Source: Auanema rhodensis (taxonomy: Eukaryota; Animalia; Nematoda). Taken from it: a stretch of DNA of 64,000 nucleotides. The DNA lies in contig OZ059900.1 in assembly GCA_964057225.1 (NCBI GenBank), forward strand, positions 14,570,001 to 14,634,000. The letters are read 5' to 3'. Of the stretch, positions 1 to 64,000 are shown in pieces (position 1 is the first letter of the stretch; each line of letters starts with the position of its first letter). The position numbers were made by a program, and so were the translations under genes. Below the pieces are notes generated by a model. That model made no database searches. It saw only the letters and a program-made list of their open reading frames with translations, and was not told the DNA's origin.

Positions 1-60
1 TAGTGGTGAGTATCCGCGTCTGTCACATGCGAGACCCGGGTTCAATTCCCGGCCGGGGAG
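1..60 (+). tRNA. tRNA-Asp(GTC), 5' end cut by window edge
   Basis: nt 13-72 of the consensus. Confidence 0.9.
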
Positions 61-434
61 AATGTTTTTGTTCTGATTCATCGTTATTGAATGTTATGCT
101 ATTTTTGTTTTCTTAAAAAAGTCGGATAAAAACGATAATTATTAGAAAAAAGATTGTTTTAAACTTTCTGCTTTTTCAAAAGTGATTTGAGCTTGTGTTT
201 TTTTTCTAAATTGTTAAACATTTCTATTTAGTTTAAGTGTTCTATATTAATTACGATGAAAAAAATCGAAACGTCAGCGTTAATCAATTGTTCATTGTAA
301 CACCAAACTTCAATTAGCTCTTTGATTAAAGTAGGCCATAAATCAAGATATGTTAGAGACAGTGTTTCATTTTTCTACTTTAATTCAAACTCACACTCTT
401 AATGAAAGTTTCTAAGTGCAAATTCAATCCTCGG

Positions 435-446
435 TAGTATAGTGGT
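435..446 (+). promoter_or_regulatory. Pol III type-2 A box (representative; present in every unit)
   Basis: TAGTATAGTGGT at tRNA nt 8-19 fits TRGYNNANNNG. Confidence 0.85.
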
Positions 447-477
447 GAGTATCCGCGTCTGTCACATGCGAGACCCG

Positions 478-488
478 GGTTCAATTCC
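478..488 (+). promoter_or_regulatory. Pol III type-2 B box (representative; present in every unit)
   Basis: GGTTCAATTCC fits GWTCRANNC. Confidence 0.9.
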
Positions 489-503
489 CGGCCGGGGAGA
501 ATG

Positions 504-508
504 TTTTT
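504..508 (+). terminator. Pol III oligo-T terminator (representative; T5 in most units, T4 or T8 in variants)
   Basis: AATG-TTTTT immediately after the discriminator base; another T5 about 40 nt downstream. Confidence 0.85.
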
Positions 509-866
509 GTTCTGATTCATCGTTATTGAATGTTATGCTATTTTTGTTTTCTTCAAAAAGTCGGATAAAAACGATAATTATTAGAAAAAAGATTGTTTTA
601 AACTTTCTGTTTTTTCAAAAGTGATTTGAGCTTGTGTTTTTTTTCTAAATTGTTAAACATTTCCATTTAATTTAAATGTTCTATCTCAATTACGATGAAA
701 AAAAATGGAACGTCAGCGTTAATCAATTGTTCATTGTAACACCAAACTTCAATTAGCTCTTTGATTAAAGTAGGCCATAAATCAAGATATGTTAGAGACA
801 GTGTTTCATTTTTCTACTTTAATTCAAACTCACACTCTTAATGAAAGTTTCTAAGTGCAAATTCAA

Positions 867-938
867 TCCTCGGTAGTATAGTGGTGAGTATCCGCGTCTG
901 TCACATGCGAGACCCGGGTTCAATTCCCGGCCGGGGAG
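867..938 (+). tRNA. tRNA-Asp(GTC)
   Basis: consensus copy. Confidence 0.95.
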
Positions 939-1310
939 AATGTTTTTGTTCTGATTCAACGTTATTGAATGTTATGCTATTTTTGTTTTCTTCAAAAAGT
1001 TGGATAAAAAAGATAATTATTAGAAAAAAGATTGTTTTATTTTAAACTTTCTGCTTTTTCAAAAGTGATTTGAGCTTGTGATTTTTTTTTAAATTTTCAA
1101 ACATTTCTATTTAATTTAAGTGTTCTATCTTAATTACGATGAAAAAAATTGATACGTCAGCGTTTATCAATCGTTAATTGTAACACCAAACTTCAATTAG
1201 CTCTTTGAGTAAAGTAGGCCATAAATCAAGATATGTTAGAGACAGTGTTTCATTTTTCTACTTTAATTCAAACTCACACTCTTAATGAAAGTTTCTAAGT
1301 GCAAATTCAA

Positions 1311-1382
1311 TCCTCGGTAGTATAGTGGTGAGTATCCGCGTCTGTCACATGCGAGACCCGGGTTCAATTCCCGGCCGGGGAG
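1311..1382 (+). tRNA. tRNA-Asp(GTC)
   Basis: consensus copy. Confidence 0.95.
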
Positions 1383-1749
1383 AATGTTTTTGTTCTGATT
1401 CATCGTTATTGAATGTTATGCTATTTTTGTTTTCTTAAAAAAGTCGGATAAAAACGATAATTATTAGAAAAAAGATTGTTTTAAACTTTCTGCTTTTTCA
1501 AAAGTGATTTGAGCTTGTGTTTTTTTTCTAAATTGTTAAACATTTCTATTTAGTTTAAGTGTTCTATATTAATTACGATGAAAAAAATCGAAACGTCAGC
1601 GTTAATCAATTGTTCATTGTAACACCAAACTTCAATTAGCTCTTTGATTAAAGTAGGCCATAAATCAAGATATGTTAGAGACAGTGTTTCATTTTTCTAC
1701 TTTAATTCAAACTCACACTCTTAATGAAAGTTTCTAAGTGCAAATTCAA

Positions 1750-1821
1750 TCCTCGGTAGTATAGTGGTGAGTATCCGCGTCTGTCACATGCGAGACCCGG
1801 GTTCAATTCCCGGCCGGGGAG
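1750..1821 (+). tRNA. tRNA-Asp(GTC)
   Basis: consensus copy. Confidence 0.95.
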
Positions 1822-2188
1822 AATGTTTTTGTTCTGATTCATCGTTATTGAATGTTATGCTATTTTTGTTTTCTTCAAAAAGTCGGATAAAAACGATAAT
1901 TATTAGAAAAAAGATTGTTTTAAACTTTCTGTTTTTTCAAAAGTGATTTGAGCTTGTGTTTTTTTTCTAAATTGTTAAACATTTCCATTTAATTTAAATG
2001 TTCTATCTCAATTACGATGAAAAAAAATGGAACGTCAGCGTTAATCAATTGTTCATTGTAACACCAAACTTCAATTAGCTCTTTGATTGAAGTAGGCCAT
2101 GAATCAAGATATGTTAGAGACAGTGTTTCATTTTTCTACTTTAATTCAAACTCACACTCTTAATGAAAGTTTCTAAGTGCAAATTCAA

Positions 2189-3066: not shown

Positions 3067-3138
3067 TCGTCGGTAGTATAGTGGTGAGTATCCGCGTCTG
3101 TCACATGCGAGACCCGGGTTCAATTCCCGGCCGGGGAG
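3067..3138 (+). tRNA. tRNA-Asp(GTC), C3G variant
   Basis: TCGTCGG, acceptor-stem mismatch. Confidence 0.85.
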
Positions 3139-3505
3139 AATGTTTTTGTTCTGATTCATCGTTATTGAATGTTATGCTATTTTTGTTTTCTTCCAAAAGT
3201 CGAATTAAAAAGATAATTATTAGAAAAAAGGTTATTTTAAACTTTCTGTTTTTTCAAAAGTGATTTGAGCTTGTGTTTTTTTTCTAAATTGTTAAACATT
3301 TCCATTTAATTTAAATGTTCTATCTCAATTACGATGAAAAAAAATGGAACGTCAGCGTTAATCAATTGTTCATTGTAACACCAAACTTCAATTAGCTCTT
3401 TGATTGAAGTAGGCCATGAATCAAGATATGTTAGAGACAGTGTTTCATTTTTCTACTTTAATTCAAACTCACACTCTTAATGAAAGTTTCTAAGTGCAAA
3501 TTCAA

Positions 3506-3577
3506 TCCTCGGTAGTATAGTGGTGAGTATCCGCGTCTGTCACATGCGAGACCCGGGTTCAATTCCCGGCCGGGGAG
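3506..3577 (+). tRNA. tRNA-Asp(GTC)
   Basis: consensus copy. Confidence 0.95.
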
Positions 3578-3943
3578 AATGTTTTTGTTCTGATTCATCG
3601 TTATTGAATGTTATGCTATTTTTGTTTTCTTCCAAAAGTCGAATTAAAAAGATAATTATTAGAAAAAAGGTTATTTTAAACTTTCTGTTTTTTCAACAGT
3701 GATTTGAGCTTGTGATATTTTCTAAATTTTTAAACATTTCCATTTAATTTAAGTATTCTATCTCAATTACGATGAAAAAAAATGGAACGTCAGCGTTAAT
3801 CAATTGTTCATTGTAACACCAAACTTCAATTAGCTCTTTGAGTAAAGTAGGCCATAAATCAAGATATGTTAGAGACAGTGTTTCATTTTTCTACTTTAAT
3901 TCAAACTCACACTCTTAATGAAAGTTTCTAAGTGCAAATTCAA

Positions 3944-4015
3944 TCCTCGGTAGTATAGTGGTGAGTATCCGCGTCTGTCACATGCGAGACCCGGGTTCAA
4001 TTCCCGGCCGGGGAG
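3944..4015 (+). tRNA. tRNA-Asp(GTC)
   Basis: consensus copy. Confidence 0.95.
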
Positions 4016-4382
4016 AATGTTTTTGTTCTGATTCATCGTTATTGAATGTTATGCTATTTTTGTTTTCTTCAAAAAGTCGGATAAAAACGATAATTATTAG
4101 AAAAAAGATTGTTTTAAACTTTCTGCTTTTTCAAAAGTGATTTGAGCTTGTGATTTTTTTTTAAATTTTCAAACATTTCTATTTAATTTAAGTGTTCTAT
4201 CTTAATTACGATGAAAAAAATTGATACGTCAGCGTTTATCAATCGTTAATTGTAACACCAAACTTCAATTAGCTCTTTGAGTAAAGTAGGCCATAAATCA
4301 AGATATGTTAGAGACAGTGTTTCATTTTTCTACATTAATTCAAACTCACACTCTTAATGAAAGTTTCTGAGTGCAAATTCAA

Positions 4383-4454
4383 TCCTCGGTAGTATAGTGG
4401 TGAGTATCCGCGTCTGTCACATGCGAGACCCGGGTTCAATTCCCGGCCGGGGAG
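4383..4454 (+). tRNA. tRNA-Asp(GTC)
   Basis: consensus copy. Confidence 0.95.
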
Positions 4455-4820
4455 AATGTTTTTGTTCTGATTCATCGTTATTGAATGTTATGCTATTTTT
4501 GTTTTCTTCAAAAAGTCGGATAAAAACGATAATTATTAGAAAAAAGATTGTTTTAAACTTTCTGCTTTTTCAAAAGTGATTTGAGCTTGTGATTTTTTTT
4601 AAATTCTTAAACATTTCCATTTAATTTAAATGTTCTATCTCAATTACGATGAAAAAAGTTGAAACGTCAGCGTTAATCAATTGTTCATTCTAACACCAAA
4701 CTTCAATTAGCTCTTTGAGTAAAGTAGGCCATAAATCAAGATATGTTAGAGACAGTGTTTCATTTTTCTACTTTAATTCAAACTCACACTCTTAATGAAA
4801 GTTTCTAAGTGCAAATTCAA

Positions 4821-4892
4821 TCCTCGGTAGTATAGTGGTGAGTATCCGCGTCTGTCACATGCGAGACCCGGGTTCAATTCCCGGCCGGGGAG
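4821..4892 (+). tRNA. tRNA-Asp(GTC)
   Basis: consensus copy. Confidence 0.95.
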
Positions 4893-5258
4893 AATGCTTT
4901 TGTTCTGATTCATCATTATTGAATGTTATGCTATTTTTGTTTTCTTCAAAAAGTTGGATAAAGACGATAATTATTAGAAAAAAGATTGTTTTAAACTTTC
5001 TGCTTTTTCAAAAGTGGTTTGAGCTTGTGATTTTTTTTAAATTTTCAAACATTTCTATTTAATTTAAGTGTTCTATCTTAATTACGATGAAAAAAATTGA
5101 TACGTCAGCGTTTATCAATCGTTAATTGTAACACCAAACTTCAATTAGCTCTTTGAAAAAAGTAGGCCATAAATCAAGATATGTTAGAGACAGTGTTTCA
5201 TTTTTCTACTTTAATTCAAACTCACACTCTTAATGAAAGTTTCTAAGTGCAAATTCAA

Positions 5259-5330
5259 TCCTCGGTAGTATAGTGGTGAGTATCCGCGTCTGTCACATGC
5301 GAGACCCGGGTTCAATTCCCGGCCGGGGAG
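5259..5330 (+). tRNA. tRNA-Asp(GTC)
   Basis: consensus copy. Confidence 0.95.
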
Positions 5331-5696
5331 AATGTTTTTGTTCTGATTCATCGTTATTGAATGTTATGCTATTTTTGTTTTCTTCCAAAAGTCGAATTAA
5401 AAAGATAATTATTAGAAAAAAGGTTATTTTAAACTTTCTGTTTTTTCAACAGTGATTTGAGCTTGTGATATTTTCTAAATTTTTAAACATTTCCATTTAA
5501 TTTAAGTATTCTATCTCAATTACGATGAAAAAAAATGGAACGTCAGCGTTAATCAATTGTTCATTGTAACACCAAACTTCAATTAGCTCTTTGAGTAAAG
5601 TAGGCCATAAATCAAGTTATGTTAGAGACAGTGTTTCATTTTTCTACTTTAATTCAAACTCACACTCTTAATGAAAGTTTCTAAGTGCAAATTCAA

Positions 5697-5768
5697 TCCT
5701 CGGTAGTATAGTGGTGAGTATCCGCGTCTGTCACATGCGAGACCCGGGTTCAATTCCCGGCCGGGGAG
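5697..5768 (+). tRNA. tRNA-Asp(GTC)
   Basis: consensus copy. Confidence 0.95.
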
Positions 5769-6134
5769 AATGCTTTTGTTCTGATTCATCATTATTGAAT
5801 GTTATGCTATTTTTGTTTTCTTCAAAAAGTTGGATAAAGACGATAATTATTAGAAAAAAGATTGTTTTAAACTTTCTGCTTTTTCAAAAGTGGTTTGAGC
5901 TTGTGATTTTTTTTAAATTTTCAAACATTTCTATTTAATTTAAGTGTTCTATCTTAATTACGATGAAAAAAATTGATACGTCAGCGTTTATCAATCGTTA
6001 ATTGTAACACCAAACTTCAATTAGCTCTTTGAAAAAAGTAGGCCATAAATCAAGATATGTTAGAGACAGTGTTTCATTTTTCTACTTTAATTCAAACTCA
6101 CACTCTTAATGAAAGTTTCTAAGTGCAAATTCAA

Positions 6135-6206
6135 TCCTCGGTAGTATAGTGGTGAGTATCCGCGTCTGTCACATGCGAGACCCGGGTTCAATTCCCGGCC
6201 GGGGAG
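6135..6206 (+). tRNA. tRNA-Asp(GTC)
   Basis: consensus copy. Confidence 0.95.
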
Positions 6207-6572
6207 AATGTTTTTGTTCTGATTCATCGTTATTGAATGTTATGCTATTTTTGTTTTCTTCAAAAAGTCGGATAAAGACGATAATTATTAGAAAAAAGAT
6301 TGTTTTAAACTTTCTGCTTTTTCAAAAGTGATTTGAGCTTGTGATTTTTTTTAAATTTTCAAACATTTCTATTTAATTTAAGTGTTCTATCTTAATTACG
6401 ATGAAAAAAATTGATACGTCAGCGTTTATCAATCGTTAATTGTAACACCAAACTTCAATTAGCTCTTTGAGTAAAGTAGGCCATAAATCAAGATATGTTA
6501 GAGACAGTGTTTCATTTTTCTACTTTAATTCAAACTCACACTCTTAATGAAAGTTTCTAAGTGCAAATTCAA

Positions 6573-6644
6573 TCCTCGGTAGTATAGTGGTGAGTATCCG
6601 CGTCTGTCACATGCGAGACCCGGGTTCAATTCCCGGCCGGGGAG
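6573..6644 (+). tRNA. tRNA-Asp(GTC)
   Basis: consensus copy. Confidence 0.95.
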
Positions 6645-7011
6645 AATGTTTTTGTTCTGATTCATCGTTATTGAATGTTATGCTATTTTTGTTTTCTTCA
6701 AAAAGTCGGATAAAAACGATAATTATTAGAAAAAAGATTGTTTTAAACTTTCTGCTTTTTCAAAAGTGATTTGAGCTTGTGATTTTTTTTTAAATTTTCA
6801 AACATTTCTATTTAATTTAAGTGTTCTATCTTAATTACGATGAAAAAAATTGATACGTCAGCGTTTATCAATCGTTAATTGTAACACCAAACTTCAATTA
6901 GCTCTTTGAGTAAAGTAGGCCATAAATCAAGATATGTTAGAGACAGTGTTTCATTTTTCTACTTTAATTCAAACTCACACTCTTAATGAAAGTTTCTAAG
7001 TGCAAATTCAA

Positions 7012-7083
7012 TCCTCGGTAGTATAGTGGTGAGTATCCGCGTCTGTCACATGCGAGACCCGGGTTCAATTCCCGGCCGGGGAG
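7012..7083 (+). tRNA. tRNA-Asp(GTC)
   Basis: consensus copy. Confidence 0.95.
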
Positions 7084-7449
7084 AATGTTTTTGTTCTGAT
7101 TCATCGTTATTGAATGTTATGCTATTTTTGTTTTCTTCCAAAAGTCGAATTAAAAAGATAATTATTAGAAAAAAGGTTATTTTAAACTTTCTGTTTTTTC
7201 AACAGTGATTTGAGCTTGTGATATTTTCTAAATTTTTAAACATTTCCATTTAATTTAAGTATTCTATCTCAATTACGATGAAAAAAAATGGAACGTCAGC
7301 GTTAATCAATTGTTCATTGTAACACCAAACTTCAATTAGCTCTTTGAGTAAAGTAGGCCATAAATCAAGATATGTTAGAGACAGTGTTTCATTTTTCTAC
7401 TTTAATTCAAACTCACACTCTTAATGAAAGTTTCTAAGTGCAAATTCAA

Positions 7450-7521
7450 TCCTCGGTAGTATAGTGGTGAGTATCCGCGTCTGTCACATGCGAGACCCGG
7501 GTTCAATTCCCGGCCGGGGAG
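7450..7521 (+). tRNA. tRNA-Asp(GTC)
   Basis: consensus copy. Confidence 0.95.
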
Positions 7522-7887
7522 AATGCTTTTGTTCTGATTCATCATTATTGAATGTTATGCTATTTTTGTTTTCTTCAAAAAGTCGGATAAAGACGATAAT
7601 TATTAGAAAAAAGATTGTTTTAAACTTTCTGTTTTTTCAAAAGTGGTTTGAGCTTGTGATTTTTTTAAAATTTTCAAACATTTCTATTTAATTTAAGTGT
7701 TCTATCTTAATTACGATGAAAAAAATTGATACGTCAGCGTTTATCAATCGTTAATTGTAACACCAAACTTCAATTAGCTCTTTGAGTAAAGTAGGCCATA
7801 AATCAAGATATGTTAGAGACAGTGTTTCATTTTTCTACTATAATTCAAACTCACACTCTTAATGAAAGTTTCTAAGTGCAAATTCAA

Positions 7888-7959
7888 TCGTCGGTAGTAT
7901 AGTGGTGAGTATCCGCGTCTGTCACATGCGAGACCCGGGTTCAATTCCCGGCCGGGGAG
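7888..7959 (+). tRNA. tRNA-Asp(GTC), C3G variant
   Basis: TCGTCGG. Confidence 0.85.
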
Positions 7960-8326
7960 AATGTTTTTGTTCTGATTCATCGTTATTGAATGTTATGCTA
8001 TTTTTGTTTCCTTCAAAAAGTCGGCTAAAAACGATAATTATTAGAAAAAAGATTGTTTTAAACTTTCTGCTTTTTCAAAAGTGATTTGAGCTTGTGTTTT
8101 TTTTCTAAATTGTTAAACATTTCTATTTAATTTAAGTGTTCTATCTTAATTACGATGAAAAAAATTGATACGTCAGCGTTTATCAATCGTTAATTGTAAC
8201 ACCAAACTTCAATTAGCTCTTTGAGTAAAGTAGGCCATAAATCAAGATATGTTAGAGACAGTGTTTCATTTTTCTACTATAATTCAAACTCACACTCTTA
8301 ATGAAAGTTTCTAAGTGCAAATTCAA

Positions 8327-8398
8327 TCGTCGGTAGTATAGTGGTGAGTATCCGCGTCTGTCACATGCGAGACCCGGGTTCAATTCCCGGCCGGGGAG
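8327..8398 (+). tRNA. tRNA-Asp(GTC), C3G variant
   Basis: TCGTCGG. Confidence 0.85.
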
Positions 8399-8764
8399 AA
8401 TGTTTTTGTTCTGATTCATCGTTATTGAATGTTATGCTATTTTTGTTTTCTTCCAAAAGTCGAATTAAAAAGATAATTATTAGAAAAAAGGTTATTTTAA
8501 ACTTTCTGTTTTTTCAACAGTGATTTGAGCTTGTGATATTTTCTAAATTTTTAAACATTTCCATTTAATTTAAATATTCTATCTCAATTACGATGAAAAA
8601 AAATGGAACGTCAGCGTTAATCAATTGTTCATTGTAACACCAAACTTCAATTAGCTCTTTGAGTAAAGTAGGCCATAAATCAAGATATGTTAGAGACAGT
8701 GTTTCATTTTTCTACTTTAATTCAAACTCACACTCTTAATGAAAGTTTCTAAGTGCAAATTCAA

Positions 8765-8836
8765 TCCTCGGTAGTATAGTGGTGAGTATCCGCGTCTGTC
8801 ACATGCGAGACCCGGGTTCAATTCCCGGCCGGGGAG
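8765..8836 (+). tRNA. tRNA-Asp(GTC)
   Basis: consensus copy. Confidence 0.95.
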
Positions 8837-9203
8837 AATGTTTTTGTTCTGATTCATCGTTATTGAATGTTATGCTATTTTTGTTTCCTTCAAAAAGTCG
8901 GCTAAAAACGATAATTATTAGAAAAAAGATTGTTTTAAACTTTCTGCTTTTTCAAAAGTGATTTGAGCTTGTGTTTTTTTTCTAAATTGTTAAACATTTC
9001 TATTTAATTTAAGTGTTCTATCTTAATTACGATGAAAAAAATTGATACGTCAGCGTTTATCAATCGTTAATTGTAACACCAAACTTCAATTAGCTCTTTG
9101 AGTAAAGTAGGCCATAAATCAAGATATGTTAGAGACAGTGTTTCATTTTTCTACTATAATTCAAACTCACACTCTTAATGAAAGTTTCTAAGTGCAAATT
9201 CAA

Positions 9204-9275
9204 TCGTCGGTAGTATAGTGGTGAGTATCCGCGTCTGTCACATGCGAGACCCGGGTTCAATTCCCGGCCGGGGAG
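9204..9275 (+). tRNA. tRNA-Asp(GTC), C3G variant
   Basis: TCGTCGG. Confidence 0.85.
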
Positions 9276-9641
9276 AATGTTTTTGTTCTGATTCATCGTT
9301 ATTGAATGTTATGCTATTTTTGTTTTCTTCCAAAAGTCGAATTAAAAAGATAATTATTAGAAAAAAGGTTATTTTAAACTTTCTGTTTTTTCAAAAGTGA
9401 TTTGAGCTTGTGATATTTTCTAAATTCTTAAACATTTCCATTTAATTTAAGTATTCTATCTCAATTACGATGAAAAAAGTTGAAACGTCAGCGTTAATCA
9501 ATTGTTCATTCTAACACCAAACTTCAATTAGCTCTTTGAGTAAAGTAGGCCATAAATCAAGATATGTTAGAGACAGTGTTTCATTTTTCTACTATAATTC
9601 AAACTCACACTCTTAATGAAAGTTTCTAAGTGCAAATTCAA

Positions 9642-9713
9642 TCGTCGGTAGTATAGTGGTGAGTATCCGCGTCTGTCACATGCGAGACCCGGGTTCAATT
9701 CCCGGCCGGGGAG
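9642..9713 (+). tRNA. tRNA-Asp(GTC), C3G variant
   Basis: TCGTCGG. Confidence 0.85.
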
Positions 9714-10079
9714 AATGTTTTTGTTCTGATTCATCGTTATTGAATGTTATGCTATTTTTGTTTTCTTCCAAAAGTCGAATTAAAAAGATAATTATTAGAA
9801 AAAAGGTTATTTTAAACTTTCTGTTTTTTCAACAGTGATTTGAGCTTGTGATATTTTCTAAATTTTTAAACATTTCCATTTAATTTAAGTATTCTATCTC
9901 AATTACGATGAAAAAAAATGGAACGTCAGCGTTAATCAATTGTTCATTGTAACACCAAACTTCAATTAGCTCTTTGAGTAAAGTAGGCCATAAATCAAGT
10001 TATGTTAGAGACAGTGTTTCATTTTTCTACTTTAATTCAAACTCACACTCTTAATGAAAGTTTCTAAGTGCAAATTCAA

Positions 10080-10151
10080 TCCTCGGTAGTATAGTGGTGA
10101 GTATCCGCGTCTGTCACATGCGAGACCCGGGTTCAATTCCCGGCCGGGGAG
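10080..10151 (+). tRNA. tRNA-Asp(GTC)
   Basis: consensus copy. Confidence 0.95.
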
Positions 10152-10517
10152 AATGCTTTTGTTCTGATTCATCATTATTGAATGTTATGCTATTTTTGTT
10201 TTCTTCAAAAAGTCGGATAAAGACGATAATTATTAGAAAAAAGATTGTTTTAAACTTTCTGTTTTTTCAAAAGTGGTTTGAGCTTGTGATTTTTTTAAAA
10301 TTTTCAAACATTTCTATTTAATTTAAGTGTTCTATCTTAATTACGATGAAAAAAATTGATACGTCAGCGTTTATCAATCGTTAATTGTAACACCAAACTT
10401 CAATTAGCTCTTTGAGTAAAGTAGGCCATAAATCAAGATATGTTAGAGACAGTGTTTCATTTTTCTACTATAATTCAAACTCACACTCTTAATGAAAGTT
10501 TCTAAGTGCAAATTCAA

Positions 10518-10589
10518 TCCTCGGTAGTATAGTGGTGAGTATCCGCGTCTGTCACATGCGAGACCCGGGTTCAATTCCCGGCCGGGGAG
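10518..10589 (+). tRNA. tRNA-Asp(GTC)
   Basis: consensus copy. Confidence 0.95.
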
Positions 10590-10956
10590 AATGTTTTTGT
10601 TCTGATTCATCGTTATTGAATGTTATGCTATTTTTGTTTCCTTCAAAAAGTCGGCTAAAAACGATAATTATTAGAAAAAAGATTGTTTTAAACTTTCTGC
10701 TTTTTCAAAAGTGATTTGAGCTTGTGTTTTTTTTCTAAATTGTTAAACATTTCTATTTAATTTAAGTGTTCTATCTTAATTACGATGAAAAAAATTGATA
10801 CGTCAGCGTTTATCAATCGTTAATTGTAACACCAAACTTCAATTAGCTCTTTGAGTAAAGTAGGCCATAAATCAAGATATGTTAGAGACAGTGTTTCATT
10901 TTTCTACTATAATTCAAACTCACACTCTTAATGAAAGTTTCTAAGTGCAAATTCAA

Positions 10957-11028
10957 TCGTCGGTAGTATAGTGGTGAGTATCCGCGTCTGTCACATGCGA
11001 GACCCGGGTTCAATTCCCGGCCGGGGAG
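10957..11028 (+). tRNA. tRNA-Asp(GTC), C3G variant
   Basis: TCGTCGG. Confidence 0.85.
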
Positions 11029-11394
11029 AATGTTTTTGTTCTGATTCATCGTTATTGAATGTTATGCTATTTTTGTTTTCTTCCAAAAGTCGAATTAAAA
11101 AGATAATTATTAGAAAAAAGGTTATTTTAAACTTTCTGTTTTTTCAAAAGTGATTTGAGCTTGTGATATTTTCTAAATTCTTAAACATTTCCATTTAATT
11201 TAAGTATTCTATCTCAATTACGATGAAAAAAGTTGAAACGTCAGCGTTAATCAATTGTTCATTCTAACACCAAACTTCAATTAGCTCTTTGAGTAAAGTA
11301 GGCCATAAATCAAGATATGTTAGAGACAGTGTTTCATTTTTCTACTATAATTCAAACTCACACTCTTAATGAAAGTTTCTAAGTGCAAATTCAA

Positions 11395-52246: not shown

Positions 52247-52618
52247 AATGTTTTTGTTCTGATTCATCGTTATTGAATGTTATGCTATTTTTGTTTTCTT
52301 CCAAAAGTCGGATAAAAAAGATAATTATTAGAAAAAAGGTTGTTTTATTTTAAACTTTCTGTTTTTTCAAAAGTGATTTGAGCTTGTGTTTTTTTTCTAA
52401 ATTGTTAAACATTTCCATTTAATTTAAATGTTCTATCTAAATTACGATGAAAAAAAATGGAACGTCAGCGTTAATCAATTGTTCATTGTAACACCAAACT
52501 TCAATTAGCTCTTTGATTAAAGTAGGCCATAAATCAAGATATGTTAGAGACAGTGTTTCATTTTTCTACTTTAATTCAAACTCACACTCTTAATGAAAGT
52601 TTCTAAGTGCAAATTCAA

Positions 52619-52690
52619 TCCTCGGTAGTATAGTGGTGAGTATCCGCGTCTGTCACATGCGAGACCCGGGTTCAATTCCCGGCCGGGGAG
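52619..52690 (+). tRNA. tRNA-Asp(GTC)
   Basis: consensus copy. Confidence 0.95.
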
Positions 52691-53057
52691 AATGTTTTTG
52701 TTCTGATTCATCGTTATTGAATGTTATGCTATTTTTGTTTTCTTCAAAAAGTCGGATAAAAACGATAATTATTAGAAAAAAGATTGTTTTAAACTTTCTG
52801 TTTTTTCAAAAGTGATTTGAGCTTGTGTTTTTTTTCTAAATTGTTAAACATTTCCATTTAATTTAAATGTTCTATCTCAATTACGATGAAAAAAAATGGA
52901 ACGTCAGCGTTAATCAATTGTTCATTGTAACACCAAACTTCATTTAGCTCTTTGATTAAAGTAGGCCATGAATCAAGATATGTTAGAGACAGTATTTCAT
53001 TTTTCTACTTTAATTCAAACTCACACTCTTAATGAAAGTTTCTAAGTGCGAATTCAA

Positions 53058-53129
53058 TCCTCGGTAGTATTGTGGTGAGTATCCGCGTCTGTCACATGCG
53101 AGACCCGGGTTCAATTCCCGGCCGGGGAG
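53058..53129 (+). tRNA. tRNA-Asp(GTC), A14T variant
   Basis: GTATTGTGG. Confidence 0.8.
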
Positions 53130-53495
53130 AATGTTTTTGTTCTGATTCATCGTTATTGAATGTTATGCTATTTTTGTTTTCTTCAAAAAGTCGGATAAAA
53201 ACGATAATTATTAGAAAAAAGATTGTTTTAAACTTTCTGCTTTTTCAAAAGTGATTTGAGCTTGTGATTTTTTTAAAATTTTCAAACATTTCTATTTAAT
53301 TTAAGTGTTCTATCTTAATTACGATGAAAAAAATTGATACGTCAGCGTTTATCAATCGTTAATTGTAACACCAAACTTCAATTAGCTCTTTGAGTAAAGT
53401 AGGCCATAAATCAAGATATGTTAGAGACAGTGTTTCATTTTTCTACTTTAATTCAAACTCACACTCTTAATGAAAGTTTCTAAGTGCAAATTCAA

Positions 53496-53567
53496 TCCTC
53501 GGTAGTATAGTGGTGAGTATCCGCGTCTGTCACATGCGAGACCCGGGTTCAATTCCCGGCCGGGGAG
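53496..53567 (+). tRNA. tRNA-Asp(GTC)
   Basis: consensus copy. Confidence 0.95.
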
Positions 53568-53934
53568 AATGTTTTTGTTCTGATTCATCGTTATTGAATG
53601 TTATGCTATTTTTGTTTTCTTCAAAAAGTCGGATAAAAACGATAATTATTAGAAAAAAGATTGTTTTAAACTTTCTGCTTTTTCAAAAGTGATTTGAGCT
53701 TGTGATTTTTTTTTAAATTTTCAAACATTTCTATTTAATTTAAGTGTTCTATCTTAATTACGATGAAAAAAATTGATACGTCAGCGTTTATCAATCGTTA
53801 ATTGTAACACCAAACTTCAATTAGCTCTTTGAGTAAAGTAGGCCATAAATCAAGATATGTTAGAGACAGTGTTTCATTTTTCTACTTTAATTCAAACTCA
53901 CACTCTTAATGAAAGTTTCTGAGTGCAAATTCAA

Positions 53935-54006
53935 TCCTCGGTAGTATAGTGGTGAGTATCCGCGTCTGTCACATGCGAGACCCGGGTTCAATTCCCGGCC
54001 GGGGAG
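53935..54006 (+). tRNA. tRNA-Asp(GTC)
   Basis: consensus copy. Confidence 0.95.
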
Positions 54007-54378
54007 AATGTTTTTGTTCTGATTCATCGTTATTGAATGTTATGTTATTTTTGTTTTCTTCCAAAAGTCGGATAAAAAAGATAATTATTAGAAAAAAGGT
54101 TGTTTTATTTTAAACTTTCTGTTTTTTCAAAAGTGATTTGAGCTTGTGTTTTTTTTCTAAATTGTTAAACATTTCCATTTAATTTAAATGTTCTATCTCA
54201 ATTACGATGAAAAAAAATGGAACGTCAGCGTTAATCAATTGTTCATTGTAACACCAAACTTCAATTAGCTCTTTGATTAAAGTAGGCCATAAATCAAGAT
54301 ATGTTAGAGACAGTGTTTCATTTTTCTACTTTAATTCAAACTCACACTCTTAATGAAAGTTTCTAAGTGCAAATTCAA

Positions 54379-54450
54379 TCCTCGGTAGTATAGTGGTGAG
54401 TATCCGCGTCTGTCACATGCGAGACCCGGGTTCAATTCCCGGCCGGGGAG
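54379..54450 (+). tRNA. tRNA-Asp(GTC)
   Basis: consensus copy. Confidence 0.95.
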
Positions 54451-54817
54451 AATGTTTTTGTTCTGATTCATCGTTATTGAATGTTATGCTATTTTTGTTT
54501 TCTTCAAAAAGTCGGATAAAAACGATAATTATTAGAAAAAAGATTGTTTTAAACTTTCTGTTTTTTCAAAAGTGATTTGAGCTTGTGTTTTTTTTCTAAA
54601 TTGTTGAACATTTCCATTTAATTTAAATGTTCTATCTCAATTACGATGAAAAAAAATGGAACGTCAGCGTTAATCAATTGTTCATTGTAACACCAAACTT
54701 CAATTAGCTCTTTGATTAAAGTAGGCCATGAATCAAGATATGTTAGAGACAGTGTTTCATTTTTCTACTTTAATTCAAACTCACACTCTTAATGAAAGTT
54801 TCTAAGTGCGAATTCAA

Positions 54818-54889
54818 TCCTCGGTAGTATTGTGGTGAGTATCCGCGTCTGTCACATGCGAGACCCGGGTTCAATTCCCGGCCGGGGAG
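54818..54889 (+). tRNA. tRNA-Asp(GTC), A14T variant
   Basis: GTATTGTGG. Confidence 0.8.
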
Positions 54890-55256
54890 AATGTTTTTGT
54901 TCTGATTCATCGTTATTGAATGTTATGCTATTTTTGTTTTCTTCAAAAAGTCGGATAAAAACGATAATTATTAGAAAAAAGATTGTTTTAAACTTTCTGC
55001 TTTTTCAAAAGTGTTTTGAGCTTGTGTTTTTTTTCTAAATTGTTAAACATTTCTATTTAATTTAAGTGTTCTATATTAATTACGATGAAAAAAATTGAAA
55101 CGTCAGCGTTAATCAATTGTTCATTGTAACACCAAACTTCAATTAGCTCTTTGTGTAAAGTAGGCCATAAAACAAGATATGTTAGAGACAGTGTTTCATT
55201 TTTCTACTTTAATTCAAACTCACACTCTTAATGAAAGTTTCTAAGTGCAACTTCAA

Positions 55257-55328
55257 TCCTCGGTAGTATAGTGGTGAGTATCCGCGTCTGTCACATGCGA
55301 GACCCGGGTTCAATTCCCGGCCGGGGAG
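55257..55328 (+). tRNA. tRNA-Asp(GTC)
   Basis: consensus copy. Confidence 0.95.
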
Positions 55329-55700
55329 AATGTTTTTGTTCTGATTCATCGTTATTGAATGTTATGCTATTTTTGTTTTCTTCCAAAAGTCGGATAAAAA
55401 AGATAATTATTAGAAAAAAGGTTGTTTTATTTTAAACTTTCTGTTTTTTCAAAAGTGATTTGAGCTTGTGTTTTTTTTCTAAATTGTTAAACATTTCCAT
55501 TTAATTTAAGTGTTCTATCTTAATTACGATGAAAAAAATTGATACGTCAGCGTTTATCAATCGTTAATTGTAACACCAAACTTCAATTAGCTCTTTGAGT
55601 AAAGTAGGCCATAAATCAAGATATGTTAGAGACAGTGTTTCATTTTTCTACTTTAATTCAAACTCACACTCTTAATGAAAGTTTCTGAGTGCAAATTCAA

Positions 55701-55772
55701 TCCTCGGTAGTATAGTGGTGAGTATCCGCGTCTGTCACATGCGAGACCCGGGTTCAATTCCCGGCCGGGGAG
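55701..55772 (+). tRNA. tRNA-Asp(GTC)
   Basis: consensus copy. Confidence 0.95.
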
Positions 55773-56139
55773 AATGTTTTTGTTCTGATTCATCGTTATT
55801 GAATGTTATGCTATTTTTGTTTTCTTCAAAAAGTCGGATAAAAACGATAATTATTAGAAAAAAGATTGTTTTAAACTTTCTTTTTTTTTAAAAGTGATTT
55901 GAGCTTGTGTTTTTTTTCTAAATTGTTAAACATTTCCATTTAATTTAAATGTTCTATCTCAATTACGATGAAAAAAAATGGAACGTCAGCGTTAATCAAT
56001 TGTTCATTGTAACACCAAACTTCAATTAGCTCTTTGATTAAAGTAGGCCATGAATCAAGATATGTTAGAGACAGTGTTTCATTTTTCTACTTTAATTCAA
56101 ACTCACACTCTTAATGAAAGTTTCTAAGTGCGAATTCAA

Positions 56140-56211
56140 TCCTCGGTAGTATTGTGGTGAGTATCCGCGTCTGTCACATGCAAGACCCGGGTTCAATTCC
56201 CGGCCGGGGAG
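56140..56211 (+). tRNA. tRNA-Asp(GTC), A14T+G43A variant, possible pseudogene
   Basis: A14 lost and C27-A43 mismatch. Confidence 0.75.
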
Positions 56212-56583
56212 AATGTTTTTGTTCTGATTCATCGTTATTGAATGTTATGCTATTTTTGTTTTCTTCCAAAAGTCGGATAAAAAAGATAATTATTAGAAAA
56301 AAGGTTGTTTTATTTTAAACTTTCTGTTTTTTCAAATGTGATTTGAGCTTGTGTTTTTTTTCTAAATTGTTAAACATTTCCATTTAATTTAAATGTTCTA
56401 TCTCAATTACGATGAAAAAAAATGGAACGTCAGCGTTAATCAATTGTTCATTGTAACACCAAACTTCAATTAGCTCTTTGATTAAAGTAGGCCATAAATC
56501 AAGATATGTTAGAGACAGTGTTTCATTTTTCTACTTTAATTCAAACTCACACTCTTAATGAAAGTTTCTAAGTGCAAATTCAA

Positions 56584-56655
56584 TCCTCGGTAGTATAGTG
56601 GTGAGTATCCGCGTCTGTCACATGCGAGACCCGGGTTCAATTCCCGGCCGGGGAG
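56584..56655 (+). tRNA. tRNA-Asp(GTC)
   Basis: consensus copy. Confidence 0.95.
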
Positions 56656-57027
56656 AATGTTTTTGTTCTGATTCATCGTTATTGAATGTTATGCTATTTT
56701 TGTTTTCTTCAAAAAGTCGGATAAAAACGATAATTATTAGAAAAAAGATTGTTTTATTTTAAACTTTCTGCTTTTTCAAAAGTGATTTGAGCTTGTGATT
56801 TTTTTTTAAATTTTCAAACATTTCTATTTAATTTAAGTGTTCTATCTTAATTACGATGAAAAAAAATGGAACGTCAGCGTTAATCAATTGTTCATTGTAA
56901 CACCAAACTTCAATTAGCTCTTTGATTAAAGTAGGCCATGAATTAAGATATGTTAGAGACAGTGTTTCATTTTTCTACTTTAATTCAAACTCACACTCTT
57001 AATGAAAGTTTCTAAGTGCAAATTCAA

Positions 57028-57099
57028 TCCTCGGTAGTATAGTGGTGAGTATCCGCGTCTGTCACATGCGAGACCCGGGTTCAATTCCCGGCCGGGGAG
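57028..57099 (+). tRNA. tRNA-Asp(GTC)
   Basis: consensus copy. Confidence 0.95.
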
Positions 57100-57466
57100 A
57101 ATGTTTTTGTTCTGATTCATCGTTATTGAATGTTATGCTATTTTTGTTTTCTTCAAAAAGTCGGATAAAAACGATAATTATTAGAAAAAAGATTGTTTTA
57201 AACTTTCTGTTTTTTCAAAAGTGATTTGAGCTTGTGATTTTTTTTTAAATTTTCAAACATTTCTATTTAATTTAAATGTTCTGACTCAATTACGATGAAA
57301 AAAATTGAAACGTCAGCGTTAATCAATTGTTCATTGTAACACCAAACTTCAATTAGCTCTTTGTGTAAAGTAGGCCATAAAACAAGATATGTTAGAGACA
57401 GTGTTTCATTTTTCTACTTTAATTCAAACTCACACTCTTAATGAAAGTTTCTAAGTGCAAATTCAA

Positions 57467-60972: not shown

Positions 60973-61044
60973 TCCTCGGTAGTATAGTGGTGAGTATCCG
61001 CGTCTGTCACATGCGAGACCCGGGTTCAATTCCCGGCCGGGGAG
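60973..61044 (+). tRNA. tRNA-Asp(GTC)
   Basis: consensus copy. Confidence 0.95.
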
Positions 61045-61411
61045 AATGTTTTTGTTCTGATTCATCGTTATTGAATGTTATGCTATTTTTGTTTTCTTCA
61101 AAAAGTCGGATAAAGACGATAATTATTAGAAAAAAGATTGTTTTAAACTTTCTGCTTTTTCAAAAGTGATTTGAGCTTGTGATTTTTTTTTAAATTTTCA
61201 AACATTTCTATTTAATTTAAGTGTTCTATCTTAATTACGATGAAAAAAAATGGAACGTCAGCGTTAATCAATTGTTCATTGTAACACCAAACTTCAATTA
61301 GCTCTTTGATTAAAGTAGGCCATGAATCAAGATATGTTAGAGACAGTGTTTCATTTTTCTACTTTAATTCAAACTCACACTCTTAATGAAAGTTTCTAAG
61401 TGCAAATTCAA

Positions 61412-61483
61412 TCCTCGGTAGTATAGTGGTGAGTATCCGCGTCTGTCACATGCGAGACCCGGGTTCAATTCCCGGCCGGGGAG
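61412..61483 (+). tRNA. tRNA-Asp(GTC)
   Basis: consensus copy. Confidence 0.95.
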
Positions 61484-61850
61484 AATGTTTTTGTTCTGAT
61501 TCATCGTTATTGAATGTTATGCTATTTTTGTTTTCTTCAAAAAGTCGGATAAAAACGATAATTATTAGAAAAAAGATTGTTTTAAACTTTCTGCTTTTTC
61601 AAAAGTGATTTGAGCTTGTGATTTTTTTTTAAATTTTCAAACATTTCTATTTAATTTAAGTGTTCTATCTTAATTACGATGAAAAAAATTGATACGTCAG
61701 CGTTTATCAATCGTTAATTGTAACACCAAACTTCAATTAGCTCTTTGAGTAAAGTAGGCCATAAATCAAGATATGTTAGAGACAGTGTTTCATTTTTCTA
61801 CTTTAATTCAAACTCACACTCTTAATGAAAGTTTCTAAGTGCAAATTCAA

Positions 61851-61922
61851 TCCTCGGTAGTATAGTGGTGAGTATCCGCGTCTGTCACATGCGAGACCCG
61901 GGTTCAATTCCCGGCCGGGGAG
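61851..61922 (+). tRNA. tRNA-Asp(GTC)
   Basis: consensus copy. Confidence 0.95.
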
Positions 61923-62289
61923 AATGTTTTTGTTCTGATTCATCGTTATTGAATGTTATGCTATTTTTGTTTTCTTCAAAAAGTCGGATAAAGACGATAA
62001 TTATTAGAAAAAAGATTGTTTTAAACTTTCTGCTTTTTCAAAAGTGATTTGAGCTTGTGATTTTTTTTAAAATTTTCAAACATTTCTATTTAATTTAAGT
62101 GTTCTATCTTAATTACGATGAAAAAAAATGGAACGTCAGCGTTAATCAATTGTTCATTGTAACACCAAACTTCAATTAGCTCTTTGATTAAAGTAGGCCA
62201 TGAATCAAGATATGTTAGAGACAGTGTTTCATTTTTCTACTTTAATTCAAACTCACACTCTTAATGAAAGTTTCTAAGTGCAAATTCAA

Positions 62290-62361
62290 TCCTCGGTAGT
62301 ATAGTGGTGAGTATCCGCGTCTGTCACATGCGAGACCCGGGTTCAATTCCCGGCCGGGGAG
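62290..62361 (+). tRNA. tRNA-Asp(GTC)
   Basis: consensus copy. Confidence 0.95.
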
Positions 62362-62728
62362 AATGTTTTTGTTCTGATTCATCGTTATTGAATGTTATGC
62401 TATTTTTGTTTTCTTCAAAAAGTCGGATGAAGACGATAATTATTAGAAAAAAGATTGTTTTAAACTTTCTGCTTTTTCAAAAGTGATTTGAGCTTGTGAT
62501 TTTTTTTTAAATTTTCAAACATTTCTATTTAATTTAAGTGTTCTATCTTAATTACGATGAAAAAAAATGGAACGTCAGCGTTAATCAATTGTTCATTGTA
62601 ACACCAAACTTCAATTAGCTCTTTGATTAAAGTAGGCCATGAATCAAGATATGTTAGAGACAGTGTTTCATTTTTCTACTTTAATTCAAACTCACACTCT
62701 TAATGAAAGTTTCTAAGTGCAAATTCAA

Positions 62729-62800
62729 TCCTCGGTAGTATAGTGGTGAGTATCCGCGTCTGTCACATGCGAGACCCGGGTTCAATTCCCGGCCGGGGAG
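62729..62800 (+). tRNA. tRNA-Asp(GTC)
   Basis: consensus copy. Confidence 0.95.
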
Positions 62801-63167
62801 AATGTTTTTGTTCTGATTCATCGTTATTGAATGTTATGCTATTTTTGTTTTCTTCAAAAAGTCGGATAAAGACGATAATTATTAGAAAAAAGATTGTTTT
62901 AAACTTTCTGCTTTTTCAAAAGTGATTTGAGCTTGTGATTTTTTTTTAAATTTTCAAACATTTCTATTTAATTTAAGTGTTCTATCTTAATTACGATGAA
63001 AAAAAATGGAACGTCAGCGTTAATCAATTGTTCATTGTAACACCAAACTTCAATTAGCTCTTTGATTAAAGTAGGCCATGAATCAAGATATGTTAGAGAC
63101 AGTGTTTCATTTTTCTACTTTAATTCAAACTCACACTCTTAATGAAAGTTTCTAAGTGCAAATTCAA

Positions 63168-63239
63168 TCCTCGGTAGTATAGTGGTGAGTATCCGCGTCT
63201 GTCACATGCGAGACCCGGGTTCAATTCCCGGCCGGGGAG
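63168..63239 (+). tRNA. tRNA-Asp(GTC)
   Basis: consensus copy. Confidence 0.95.
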
Positions 63240-63606
63240 AATGTTTTTGTTCTGATTCATCGTTATTGAATGTTATGCTATTTTTGTTTTCTTCAAAAAG
63301 TCGGATGAAGACGATAATTATTAGAAAAAAGATTGTTTTAAACTTTCTGCTTTTTCAAAAGTGATTTGAGCTTGTGATTTTTTTTTAAATTTTCAAACAT
63401 TTCTATTTAATTTAAGTGTTCTATCTTAATTACGATGAAAAAAAATGGAACGTCAGCGTTAATCAATTGTTCATTGTAACACCAAACTTCAATTAGCTCT
63501 TTGATTAAAGTAGGCCATGAATCAAGATATGTTAGAGACAGTGTTTCATTTTTCTACTTTAATTCAAACTCACACTCTTAATGAAAGTTTCTAAGTGCAA
63601 ATTCAA

Positions 63607-63678
63607 TCCTCGGTAGTATAGTGGTGAGTATCCGCGTCTGTCACATGCGAGACCCGGGTTCAATTCCCGGCCGGGGAG
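63607..63678 (+). tRNA. tRNA-Asp(GTC)
   Basis: consensus copy. Confidence 0.95.
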
Positions 63679-64000
63679 AATGTTTTTGTTCTGATTCATC
63701 GTTATTGAATGTTATGCTATTTTTGTTTTCTTCAAAAAGTCGGATAAAAACGATAATTATTAGAAAAAAGATTGTTTTAAACTTTCTGCTTTTTCAAAAG
63801 TGATTTGAGCTTGTGATTTTTTTTTAAATTTTCAAACATTTCTATTTAATTTAAGTGTTCTATCTTAATTACGATGAAAAAAATTGATACGTCAGCGTTT
63901 ATCAATCGTTAATTGTAACACCAAACTTCAATTAGCTCTTTGAGTAAAGTAGGCCATAAATCAAGATATGTTAGAGACAGTGTTTCATTTTTCTACTTTA

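What the first reader, a model, noticed from the sequence alone, without database searches (positions are those of the whole stretch)
1..64000. Single-isoacceptor tRNA mega-array: at least 146 tandem tRNA-Asp(GTC) genes organised like rDNA or satellite DNA
Seen: 146 same-strand copies at ~439 bp spacing and nothing else in 64 kb, open at both ends. Each unit is a complete Pol III transcription unit (A box, B box, terminator) and about 83% match the consensus tRNA. Known: animal tRNA genes are mostly dispersed or in mixed clusters; tandem tRNA arrays exist (Entamoeba tRNA-STR arrays, Xenopus and human 1q23 multi-tRNA repeats, Arabidopsis Pro and Ser-Tyr clusters). Inference: an array of one nematode-type isoacceptor this long probably exceeds ordinary decoding need. 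It may be a dosage amplifier (germline stockpile, Asp-rich proteins), a source of tRNA fragments, a structural TFIIIC/condensin-binding chromosome domain, or a neutral satellite that captured a tRNA. The sequence alone cannot separate these.
Basis: partly seen in the sequence, partly recalled or inferred. Interest (0 to 1): 0.8.

Follow-up and report, generated by a model that had tools for sequence, protein, structure and literature searches.

The report
Germline-only tRNA-Asp gene array, Auanema X
The window is a real, unbroken run of 146 aspartate-tRNA genes, part of about 1,200 copies beside a chromosome-breaking site on the X of the nematode Auanema rhodense, in DNA very probably discarded from body cells. 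A 2026 preprint already reports such arrays, so it is striking but not new.

Summary
The window holds 145 complete and one cut tRNA-Asp(GTC) genes, all on the + strand, in a 438/439-bp unit with nothing else. 121 of the 145 are identical 72-mers.

The genome is the 180.9-Mb germline assembly of Auanema rhodense (bioRxiv 10.64898/2026.08.27.747507). A break coordinate printed in the preprint and its three X-chromosome FISH probes all map as described, so contig 8 is the X.

The window lies in an 864-kb cluster (C8:14,237,374-15,101,2xx) of blocks in both orientations, with about 1,200 copies. The cluster begins directly after six break-site motifs spaced 3.5 kb apart and ends directly against the XT-2 satellite, which the preprint showed by FISH to be eliminated. 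The array is therefore almost certainly germline-restricted. It holds about 92% of the genome's exact tRNA-Asp genes.

New here: fixed differences between blocks fall almost only in the central 186 bp of the spacer (24 of 25). New mutations are spread evenly along the unit, but they rarely become common in the tRNA. This resembles a constrained gene family such as 5S rDNA, though it does not prove expression.

The preprint already reports tandem tRNA arrays in eliminated DNA. This scan had also found other windows of the same cluster.

The parts
1..64000 (+). Uninterrupted tandem array, 145.9 units of 438/439 bp, each with one tRNA-Asp(GTC) gene. It is part of a forward-oriented block that starts at C8:14,568,301 and runs past C8:14,661,000.
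428..499 (+). First complete tRNA-Asp(GTC) gene, used as the example unit. Anticodon at 461-463, A-box-like 11-mer at 435-445, B-box-like 11-mer at 478-488.
500..550 (+). Conserved 51-nt trailer (unit positions 73-123). T5 terminator at 504-508 and a second T-rich run near its end. No fixed difference between blocks.
551..736 (+). Variable central spacer (unit positions 124-309, 23% G+C). It carries 24 of the 25 differences between the consensus sequences of eight blocks.
737..866 (+). Conserved 130-nt leader of the next gene (unit positions 310-439). It has one fixed difference between blocks. The two resolved retrotransposon insertions elsewhere in the cluster fall in this segment.
3067..14097 (+). 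Stretch in which 10 copies carry C3-to-G in the acceptor stem (units 7, 18, 19, 21, 22, 25, 26, 30, 31, 32). This is a pair-breaking variant that has spread locally.
25859..40400 (+). Two copies of a multi-unit pattern: the same order of about 13 unit types, about 20 units apart. This is a segmental duplication inside the array.
49977..57100 (+). Higher-order zone. 444-bp units (5-bp duplication in the spacer) recur every 3-5 units, and 5 copies carry A14-to-T in the tRNA.

Best explanation
The window is the middle of one block of an X-linked family of about 1,200 tRNA-Asp(GTC) genes in Auanema rhodense. The family occupies C8:14.237-15.101 Mb. That is the first DNA distal to the right-hand programmed-elimination break site of the X, and it continues without a break motif into the XT-2 satellite. 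It is therefore present only in the germline and in embryos up to about the 12-cell stage. This is inferred from position; elimination of XT-2 itself was shown by FISH in the preprint.

The array grew and is kept similar by unequal exchange and multi-unit duplication, as satellites are. This is shown by the variant patterns. Mutations arise evenly along the unit. They rarely become common in the tRNA gene, somewhat more often in its flanks, and often in the central 186 bp of the spacer.

My preferred reading, which is inferred, is that the genes are recognised by the Pol III machinery in germ cells and add to the germline and early-embryo tRNA-Asp pool. Units whose gene part changes would then be held back, as in 5S rDNA. 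The array's size itself probably reflects relaxed selection in eliminated DNA, not need.
For: Identity of the genome and chromosome:
- The assembly size is 180,911,798 bp against 180.9 Mb in the preprint.
- The break motif on C6 has its 14th base at 16,502,174, exactly the coordinate printed for chromosome 5.
- Probe XT-1 maps to C8 0.1-3.7 Mb, XR-1 to 7.3-8.65 Mb and XT-2 to 15.2-26.2 Mb.

Position relative to elimination:
- The pattern GTTNAGGCTNAGCC gives 27 hits against 1 for the control. Where it matches, hits lie in positions expected of the preprint's four break sites per autosome (all four on C1, one to three on the others).
- On C8 it hits 6.14 Mb, 10.71 Mb and six sites at 14,217,203-14,234,678 spaced 3,495 bp apart.
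- The array starts at 14,237,374 and abuts XT-2 at about 15,101,200, with no break core there or in the window.

Copy number:
- Family-specific junction words occur 1,120 and 1,164 times, and all listed places are on C8.

Integrity:
- 121 of 145 copies in the window and 206 of 236 copies sampled in other blocks are perfect.
- They are identical to dispersed single copies on C3 and C6.

Constraint:
- 24 of 25 differences between block consensuses lie in unit positions 124-309. There are none in the tRNA plus trailer. My binomial estimate is about 2e-8.
- In 360 units, singleton sites are 10.7% in the gene module against 11.3% in the centre (p = 0.88).
- Sites with variants above 2% are 7.5% against 23.1% (p = 6e-6), and 2 of 72 in the tRNA.
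Against: - There are no expression or occupancy data.
- In the window, the flanks are not significantly more variable than the tRNA. A 130-nt conserved leader is more than an internal-promoter gene is known to need.
- Pair-breaking variants (C3-to-G in 10 copies, A14-to-T in 5) have spread locally.
- The cluster contains inverted blocks and about 38% transposon DNA, as heterochromatic satellites do.
- The preprint finds H3K9me3 on the eliminated material. It argues that repeats accumulate there because selection is weak.
- Uneven variability along a monomer is also seen in satellites with no known function (my own knowledge).
- Elimination of this particular stretch rests on position, not on read depth.
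Confidence: 0.55

Rival explanations
1. A neutral satellite that happens to contain a tRNA gene. The unit was amplified by slippage and unequal exchange in DNA that is discarded from the soma and barely seen by selection. The genes are silent in heterochromatin. The uniform gene-proximal part reflects where gene conversion or exchange is initiated (for example at the tRNA gene as a replication obstacle), not selection for tRNA output.
For: - The preprint's general model is repeat accumulation under weak selection, with H3K9me3 on the eliminated DNA.
- The flanks are conserved about as well as the tRNA.
- Defective variants have spread to 5-10 copies.
- Inverted blocks share an identical gene module. 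Unequal crossing-over cannot produce this, but gene conversion can.
- Young BEL/Pao elements are tolerated inside the array.
Against: - The tRNA has the lowest density of common variants of any part of the unit (2 of 72), although singletons are as frequent there as elsewhere.
- 83-87% of copies remain perfect.
- All Pol III signals are kept in over 90% of copies.
Confidence: 0.33
2. A chromatin or chromosome-behaviour element. An array of about 1,200 TFIIIC-binding sites placed exactly between the break-site cluster and the 11-Mb XT-2 satellite could act as a boundary or condensin-loading domain. Alternatively it could be one of the X-specific repeats that the preprint speculates may mark the X for its unusual meiotic behaviour.
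For: - All listed members of the family are on the X.
- It sits directly between the 3.5-kb repeat carrying break motifs and XT-2.
- A and B boxes are kept in 140 and 144 of 146 copies.
- The preprint speculates that X-specific repeats matter for X segregation.
- tRNA genes are known barrier and condensin sites in yeasts (my own knowledge).
Against: This rests purely on position. Nothing in the sequence distinguishes it from the other readings. The whole tRNA and the flanks are conserved, not just the boxes.
Confidence: 0.1
3. Assembly artefact: a few copies inflated into a long array.
For: None found. Long arrays are in general hard to assemble.
Against: - Units carry distinctive combinations of variants. 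The mean difference between neighbours is 12.7 positions, and only 2 adjacent pairs are identical.
- Blocks have their own consensus spacers.
- The preprint states that HiFi reads mapped uniquely in repeat regions.
Confidence: 0.02

Closest known systems
Tandem ncRNA arrays in germline-restricted DNA of Auanema rhodense (Gonzalez de la Rosa et al., bioRxiv 10.64898/2026.08.27.747507)
   Same: It is the same genome and the same class of feature. The preprint reports arrays of 5S rRNA, 'several transfer RNA loci' and U2 in eliminated DNA, with ncRNA density always under 20% per 10 kb. Here 72 of 439 bp is 16%. It also reports 19,554 tRNA loci.
   Different: The main text names no isoacceptor, unit, copy number or position, and the tables are not held here. 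The location next to the X break-site cluster and the pattern of constraint within the unit are worked out here.
5S rDNA arrays, including Xenopus oocyte-type 5S genes (my own knowledge)
   Same: A Pol III gene with an internal promoter sits in a short tandem unit at thousands of copies. The gene and near flanks are uniform and the distal spacer is variable. The use could be limited to germ cells.
   Different: Here the restriction to germ cells would be achieved by physical loss of the DNA from the soma, not by silencing. Expression is not shown.
Entamoeba tRNA gene arrays (PMC2652664)
   Same: tRNA genes are organised as long head-to-tail arrays that make up a sizeable share of the genome.
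   Different: Entamoeba units hold up to 5 different tRNA genes separated by microsatellite-like short tandem repeats, and contain almost all tRNA genes of the genome. Here there is one isoacceptor per unit and no short tandem repeats, and dispersed copies exist as well.
Arabidopsis chromosome 1 Ser-Tyr-Tyr tRNA array (PMC2886086)
   Same: A tandem tRNA gene array that evolves by local duplication.
   Different: The Arabidopsis array has 27 triplet units (81 genes) in ordinary chromosomal DNA. Here there are about 1,200 single-gene units in eliminated DNA.

Membership tests
Eukaryotic nuclear tRNA-Asp(GTC) gene (Pol III, internal promoter) | Cloverleaf with anticodon GTC that scores as a tRNA | tested here: met
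   ARAGORN finds 145 of 145 as Asp(gtc). Rfam RF00005 scores 55.4 bits against a gathering score of 29, covering model positions 1-71.
Eukaryotic nuclear tRNA-Asp(GTC) gene (Pol III, internal promoter) | A box, B box, downstream T-run, no encoded CCA | tested here: met
   A-box-like 11-mer in 140 copies, B-box-like 11-mer in 144, and T5 at +5 to +9 in 134 of 144 copies. The trailer begins AATG.
Eukaryotic nuclear tRNA-Asp(GTC) gene (Pol III, internal promoter) | Transcribed and processed into a charged tRNA | not testable with these tools
   No RNA or ChIP data are available. The sequence is identical to dispersed copies on C3 and C6.
Satellite-like tandem repeat under concerted evolution | Long head-to-tail array of near-identical units with local variant spread and multi-unit duplications | tested here: met
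Germline-restricted (eliminated) DNA of Auanema rhodense | Lies on the eliminated side of a break site bearing the SFE motif | tested here: met
   Six SFE-like motifs lie at C8:14,217,203-14,234,678. The array runs from 14,237,374 and is continuous with the XT-2 satellite, which FISH showed to be eliminated. There are no further motif hits on C8 distal to 14.235 Mb.
Germline-restricted (eliminated) DNA of Auanema rhodense | Reduced read depth and telomere-capped reads at the boundary | not testable with these tools
   Reads are not available, and the preprint's Tables S2, S4 and S6 are not held.
Entamoeba-type tRNA-STR arrays | Microsatellite-like short tandem repeats between genes; several tRNA species per unit | tested here: not met
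   TRF finds only the 439-bp period, and there is one tRNA per unit.
5S-rDNA-like constrained gene array | Gene part uniform across blocks while the spacer diverges | tested here: met
   Between block consensuses there are 0 differences in 123 bp (tRNA plus trailer), 1 in the 130-bp leader and 24 in the 186-bp central spacer. Common variants are depleted in the gene module, p = 6e-6.

The most novel reading that the evidence does not exclude
The array is a working, germline-only tRNA-Asp supply, or a Pol III/TFIIIC-bound domain, that the worm builds up in germ cells and then physically throws away from the soma. That would be a DNA-elimination counterpart of the Xenopus oocyte-type 5S genes. 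The even spread of new mutations, combined with the failure of gene-module variants to become common, would then be the footprint of selection acting on DNA that never exists in body cells.
Probability: 0.3. Interest if true: 0.7.

Novelty: already known. Interest (0 to 1): 0.35.

Why it matters
The preprint argues that DNA elimination in this worm removes mostly junk and is not used to regulate genes. About 92% of the genome's exact tRNA-Asp genes sit in the eliminated part of the X and show a gene-centred conservation pattern. If these genes are used, elimination would also separate a germline tRNA supply from a somatic one. The array carries private variants (C3-to-G, A14-to-T) that act as natural barcodes, so tRNA sequencing of gonads could settle the question directly. 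If the genes are silent, the array is a clean example of how a gene can seed a satellite where selection is weak.

Tried and rejected
- A DNA search of the window's genome with one whole unit returned nothing usable because there were too many candidates. Exact k-mer patterns were used instead.
- A strict 14+1+14 palindrome scan at the printed chromosome-5 coordinate found nothing convincing. The break motif is only a loose palindrome.
So I could not test whether the conserved flanks are shared with dispersed copies.
- I tested the idea that the BEL/Pao family targets tRNA-Asp genes, which would imply Pol III factors on the array. The two resolved sites lie at -22 to -18 and -62 to -58 upstream of a gene. 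However, 33 of the family's 44 LTR starts lie elsewhere in the genome, and orientation relative to the tRNA differs between the two sites. The idea is left open.
- An Rfam scan of three units at E up to 1 found no second RNA gene in the conserved leader.
- The MFE fold of the tRNA alone is not informative (z = -1.66). The covariance model is the relevant test.
That particular block was not sampled.
Full report
**1. The observation**

ARAGORN tRNA-Asp(gtc) genes, all on the + strand. Window bases 1-59 are the 3' part of one more. TRF reports a single array over 1-64000 with period 439, 145.9 copies and 97% matches.

Spacings are 439 (63 times) and 438 (58 times), with a few of 436-444, so nothing is inserted anywhere. 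121 of the 145 copies are the exact 72-nt consensus. The Rfam tRNA model scores 55.4 bits against a gathering score of 29, over its full length.

Each unit keeps these signals:
- an A-box-like 11-mer (140 copies);
- a B-box-like 11-mer (144 copies);
- a T5 run four bases past the 3' end (134 of 144);
- a second T-rich run about 40 nt further on (139);
- no encoded CCA.

**2. Which genome, which chromosome**

The window is G000:C8:14,570,001-14,634,000 in an assembly of 180,911,798 bp. Earlier notes of this scan named Auanema rhodense and an August 2026 preprint. I checked this in three ways.
- The preprint (bioRxiv 10.64898/2026.08.27.747507) describes a 180.9-Mb germline assembly.
- It prints one break coordinate, chromosome 5 position 16,502,174, with telomere addition between motif positions 14 and 15. 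On contig C6 the core GGCT-N-AGCC has the T of GGCT exactly at 16,502,174.
- Its FISH probe sequences map on C8 as the text describes. XT-1 maps to a 347-bp satellite at 0.1-3.7 Mb. XR-1 maps to a 348-bp satellite at 7.3-8.65 Mb. XT-2 maps to a 342-bp satellite at 15.2-26.2 Mb. A non-repetitive piece lies at the right end.

C8 is therefore the X chromosome of that assembly.

**3. Extent and copy number**

Point samples and 10-kb stretches show the 439-bp family from C8:14,237,374 to about 15,101,200. It is arranged in blocks of both orientations separated by non-array DNA.

The window belongs to a forward block that starts at 14,568,301 and runs past 14,661,000. Two words specific to the family (leader plus tRNA start, and tRNA end plus trailer) occur 1,120 and 1,164 times in the genome. 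Every listed place is on C8.

The exact 72-mer occurs 1,156 times. The listing shows 87 on C3, 1 on C6 and none on C1, C4, C5 or C7. The C3 copies comprise six dispersed genes, arrays of period 727 bp and 1,314 bp, and a few further single copies and a pair at 16.19-16.64 Mb. This leaves about 1,068 on C8 or later contigs.

So the family has roughly 1,200 members, and about 92% of the genome's exact tRNA-Asp genes are in it. The window holds about one eighth of them.

**4. Position relative to programmed DNA elimination**

This gave the half-site GTT-N-AGGCT-N-AGCC. That pattern has 27 hits in the genome against 1 for the reversed control.

Where the pattern matches on the autosomes, the hits lie in positions expected of the preprint's four break sites per autosome; on C1 all four are hit (5.57, 10.91, 13.34 and 18.00 Mb). 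On C8 it hits 6.14 Mb, 10.71 Mb and six sites from 14,217,203 to 14,234,678 spaced exactly 3,495 bp apart.

These six sites lie in a 3.5-kb tandem repeat spanning about 14,213,750-14,237,370 at essentially 100% identity. [quoted passage not shown] The last five of my six span 13,980 bp. The first is then most simply the break site itself.

The tRNA array begins immediately after this repeat. It ends directly against the XT-2 satellite, which the preprint showed by FISH to be lost from somatic nuclei. I found no break core in 14.24-14.29 Mb, in the window, or in 15.06-15.11 Mb. There is no pattern hit anywhere distal to 14.235 Mb on C8.

The array is therefore inside the 12.7-Mb right-hand eliminated arm of the X. 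This is inference from position. Read depth would settle it.

**5. How the array evolves**

Neighbouring units differ at about 12.7 positions, no less than distant ones. Grouping units by similarity shows two things: a run of about 13 unit types repeated about 20 units further on, and 3-5-unit periodicities where the 444-bp variant recurs.

tRNA variants are clustered:
- C3-to-G in 10 copies among units 7-32;
- A14-to-T in 5 copies among units 116-128;
- paired variants five or six units apart.

These are the marks of unequal exchange and segmental duplication. They also show that defective genes can spread locally.

**6. A gene-centred conservation pattern**

I built consensus units for eight blocks across the cluster, in both orientations. 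They differ at 25 columns, 24 substitutions and 1 indel. Of these, 24 lie in unit positions 124-309 and one at position 392. None lies in the tRNA or the 51 nt after it.

If differences fell evenly over 439 bp, at most one of 25 in the 253-bp gene module would have a probability of about 2e-8 (my binomial calculation).

Pooling 360 units gives this distribution of variable sites:

| Variant class | Gene module | Central spacer | p |
|---|---|---|---|
| Singleton sites | 10.7% | 11.3% | 0.88 |
| Rare sites (2 copies up to 2%) | 12.6% | 15.1% | 0.48 |
| Common sites (above 2%) | 7.5% | 23.1% | 6e-6 |

By segment, common-variant sites are 2 of 72 in the tRNA, 11 of 130 in the leader and 6 of 51 in the trailer.

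So mutations arise evenly but do not rise in frequency in and around the gene. This is the pattern of 5S rDNA and other constrained multigene families.

It is not proof of tRNA function, for three reasons. In the window the flanks are not significantly more variable than the tRNA. A 130-nt conserved leader is unexpected for an internal-promoter gene. Gene conversion started at the tRNA gene could also keep the module uniform, even between inverted blocks. No second RNA gene was found in the leader.

**7. What interrupts the array**

All five non-array samples in the cluster lie in long open frames, and two carry integrase domains.

One interruption is fully held. It is an 8,904-bp BEL/Pao element at C8:14,263,062-14,271,965 with the following features:
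- 299-bp LTRs that are 100% identical;
- one open frame of 2,657 codons (Pao peptidase, reverse transcriptase, integrase);
- a 5-bp target duplication at -22 to -18 of a tRNA-Asp gene.

A solo LTR of the same family sits at -62 to -58 of another copy. The element just left of the window belongs to the same family (99.5% identical) and is truncated.

The family has 44 LTR starts in the genome, 11 of them in the cluster. It is therefore not specific to these genes, and I draw no conclusion on targeting.

**8. Reading**

[quoted passage not shown] Its growth by unequal exchange is shown by the variant patterns.

Whether the genes are used is open. I lean towards Pol III-competent genes that are recognised in germ cells and held uniform by constraint or by gene-centred conversion. 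I think the array's size owes more to relaxed selection in eliminated DNA than to need. The neutral-satellite reading remains a strong rival, and a chromatin role is possible.

**9. Novelty**

The preprint already reports 19,554 tRNA loci and tandem arrays of 'several transfer RNA loci' in germline-restricted DNA of this genome. Tandem tRNA arrays are also known from Entamoeba (PMC2652664) and Arabidopsis (PMC2886086). This scan had already examined other windows of the same cluster.

The specific anatomy worked out here is new detail, not a new kind of thing: the isoacceptor, the unit, the roughly 1,200 copies, the placement between the break-site cluster and XT-2, and the constraint pattern.

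Noticed in passing
G000:C8:14,213,750-14,237,370 (loci L097-L099): A 3,495-bp tandem repeat, about 6.75 copies at essentially 100% identity. Each copy carries one break-site (SFE-like) motif. It lies directly between unique X DNA and the tRNA-Asp cluster. Why the break motif itself is tandemly amplified is unexplained.
   Followed up: partly
G000:C8:14,263,062-14,271,965 (L085:3062 to L086:1965): An apparently intact, very young BEL/Pao LTR retrotransposon of 8,904 bp. It has 299-bp LTRs that are 100% identical and a 2,657-codon open frame. Its primer-binding site looks complementary to a tRNA-Gly 3' end. It has a 5-bp target duplication 18-22 nt upstream of a tRNA-Asp gene. The family has 44 LTR starts genome-wide, concentrated on the X and on C5 at 10.8-11.1 Mb.
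   Followed up: partly
L091:342-641 (G000:C8:15,090,342-15,090,641): A solo LTR of the same BEL/Pao family inside the array, with target duplication TGAAA at 58-62 nt upstream of a tRNA-Asp gene. Both resolved insertions fall in the conserved leader.
   Followed up: partly
G000:C3:15.86-16.64 Mb: The same exact tRNA-Asp gene also forms arrays with 727-bp and 1,314-bp periods on another chromosome. Earlier notes describe these as U1 snRNA plus tRNA-Asp units. Whether this region is retained in the soma was not determined.
   Followed up: no
L002, L011, L014 (G000:C8:14.54, 14.70, 14.90 Mb): Other interruptions of the cluster have long open frames that do not match the BEL/Pao family above. One carries integrase domains. 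At least one further retroelement family therefore lives in the cluster.
   Followed up: no
window 500-511 and equivalents: Nine of 144 units have the first terminator weakened from T5 to T4 (AATGCTTTTG). The second T-rich run about 40 nt downstream is kept in 139 units.
   Followed up: no
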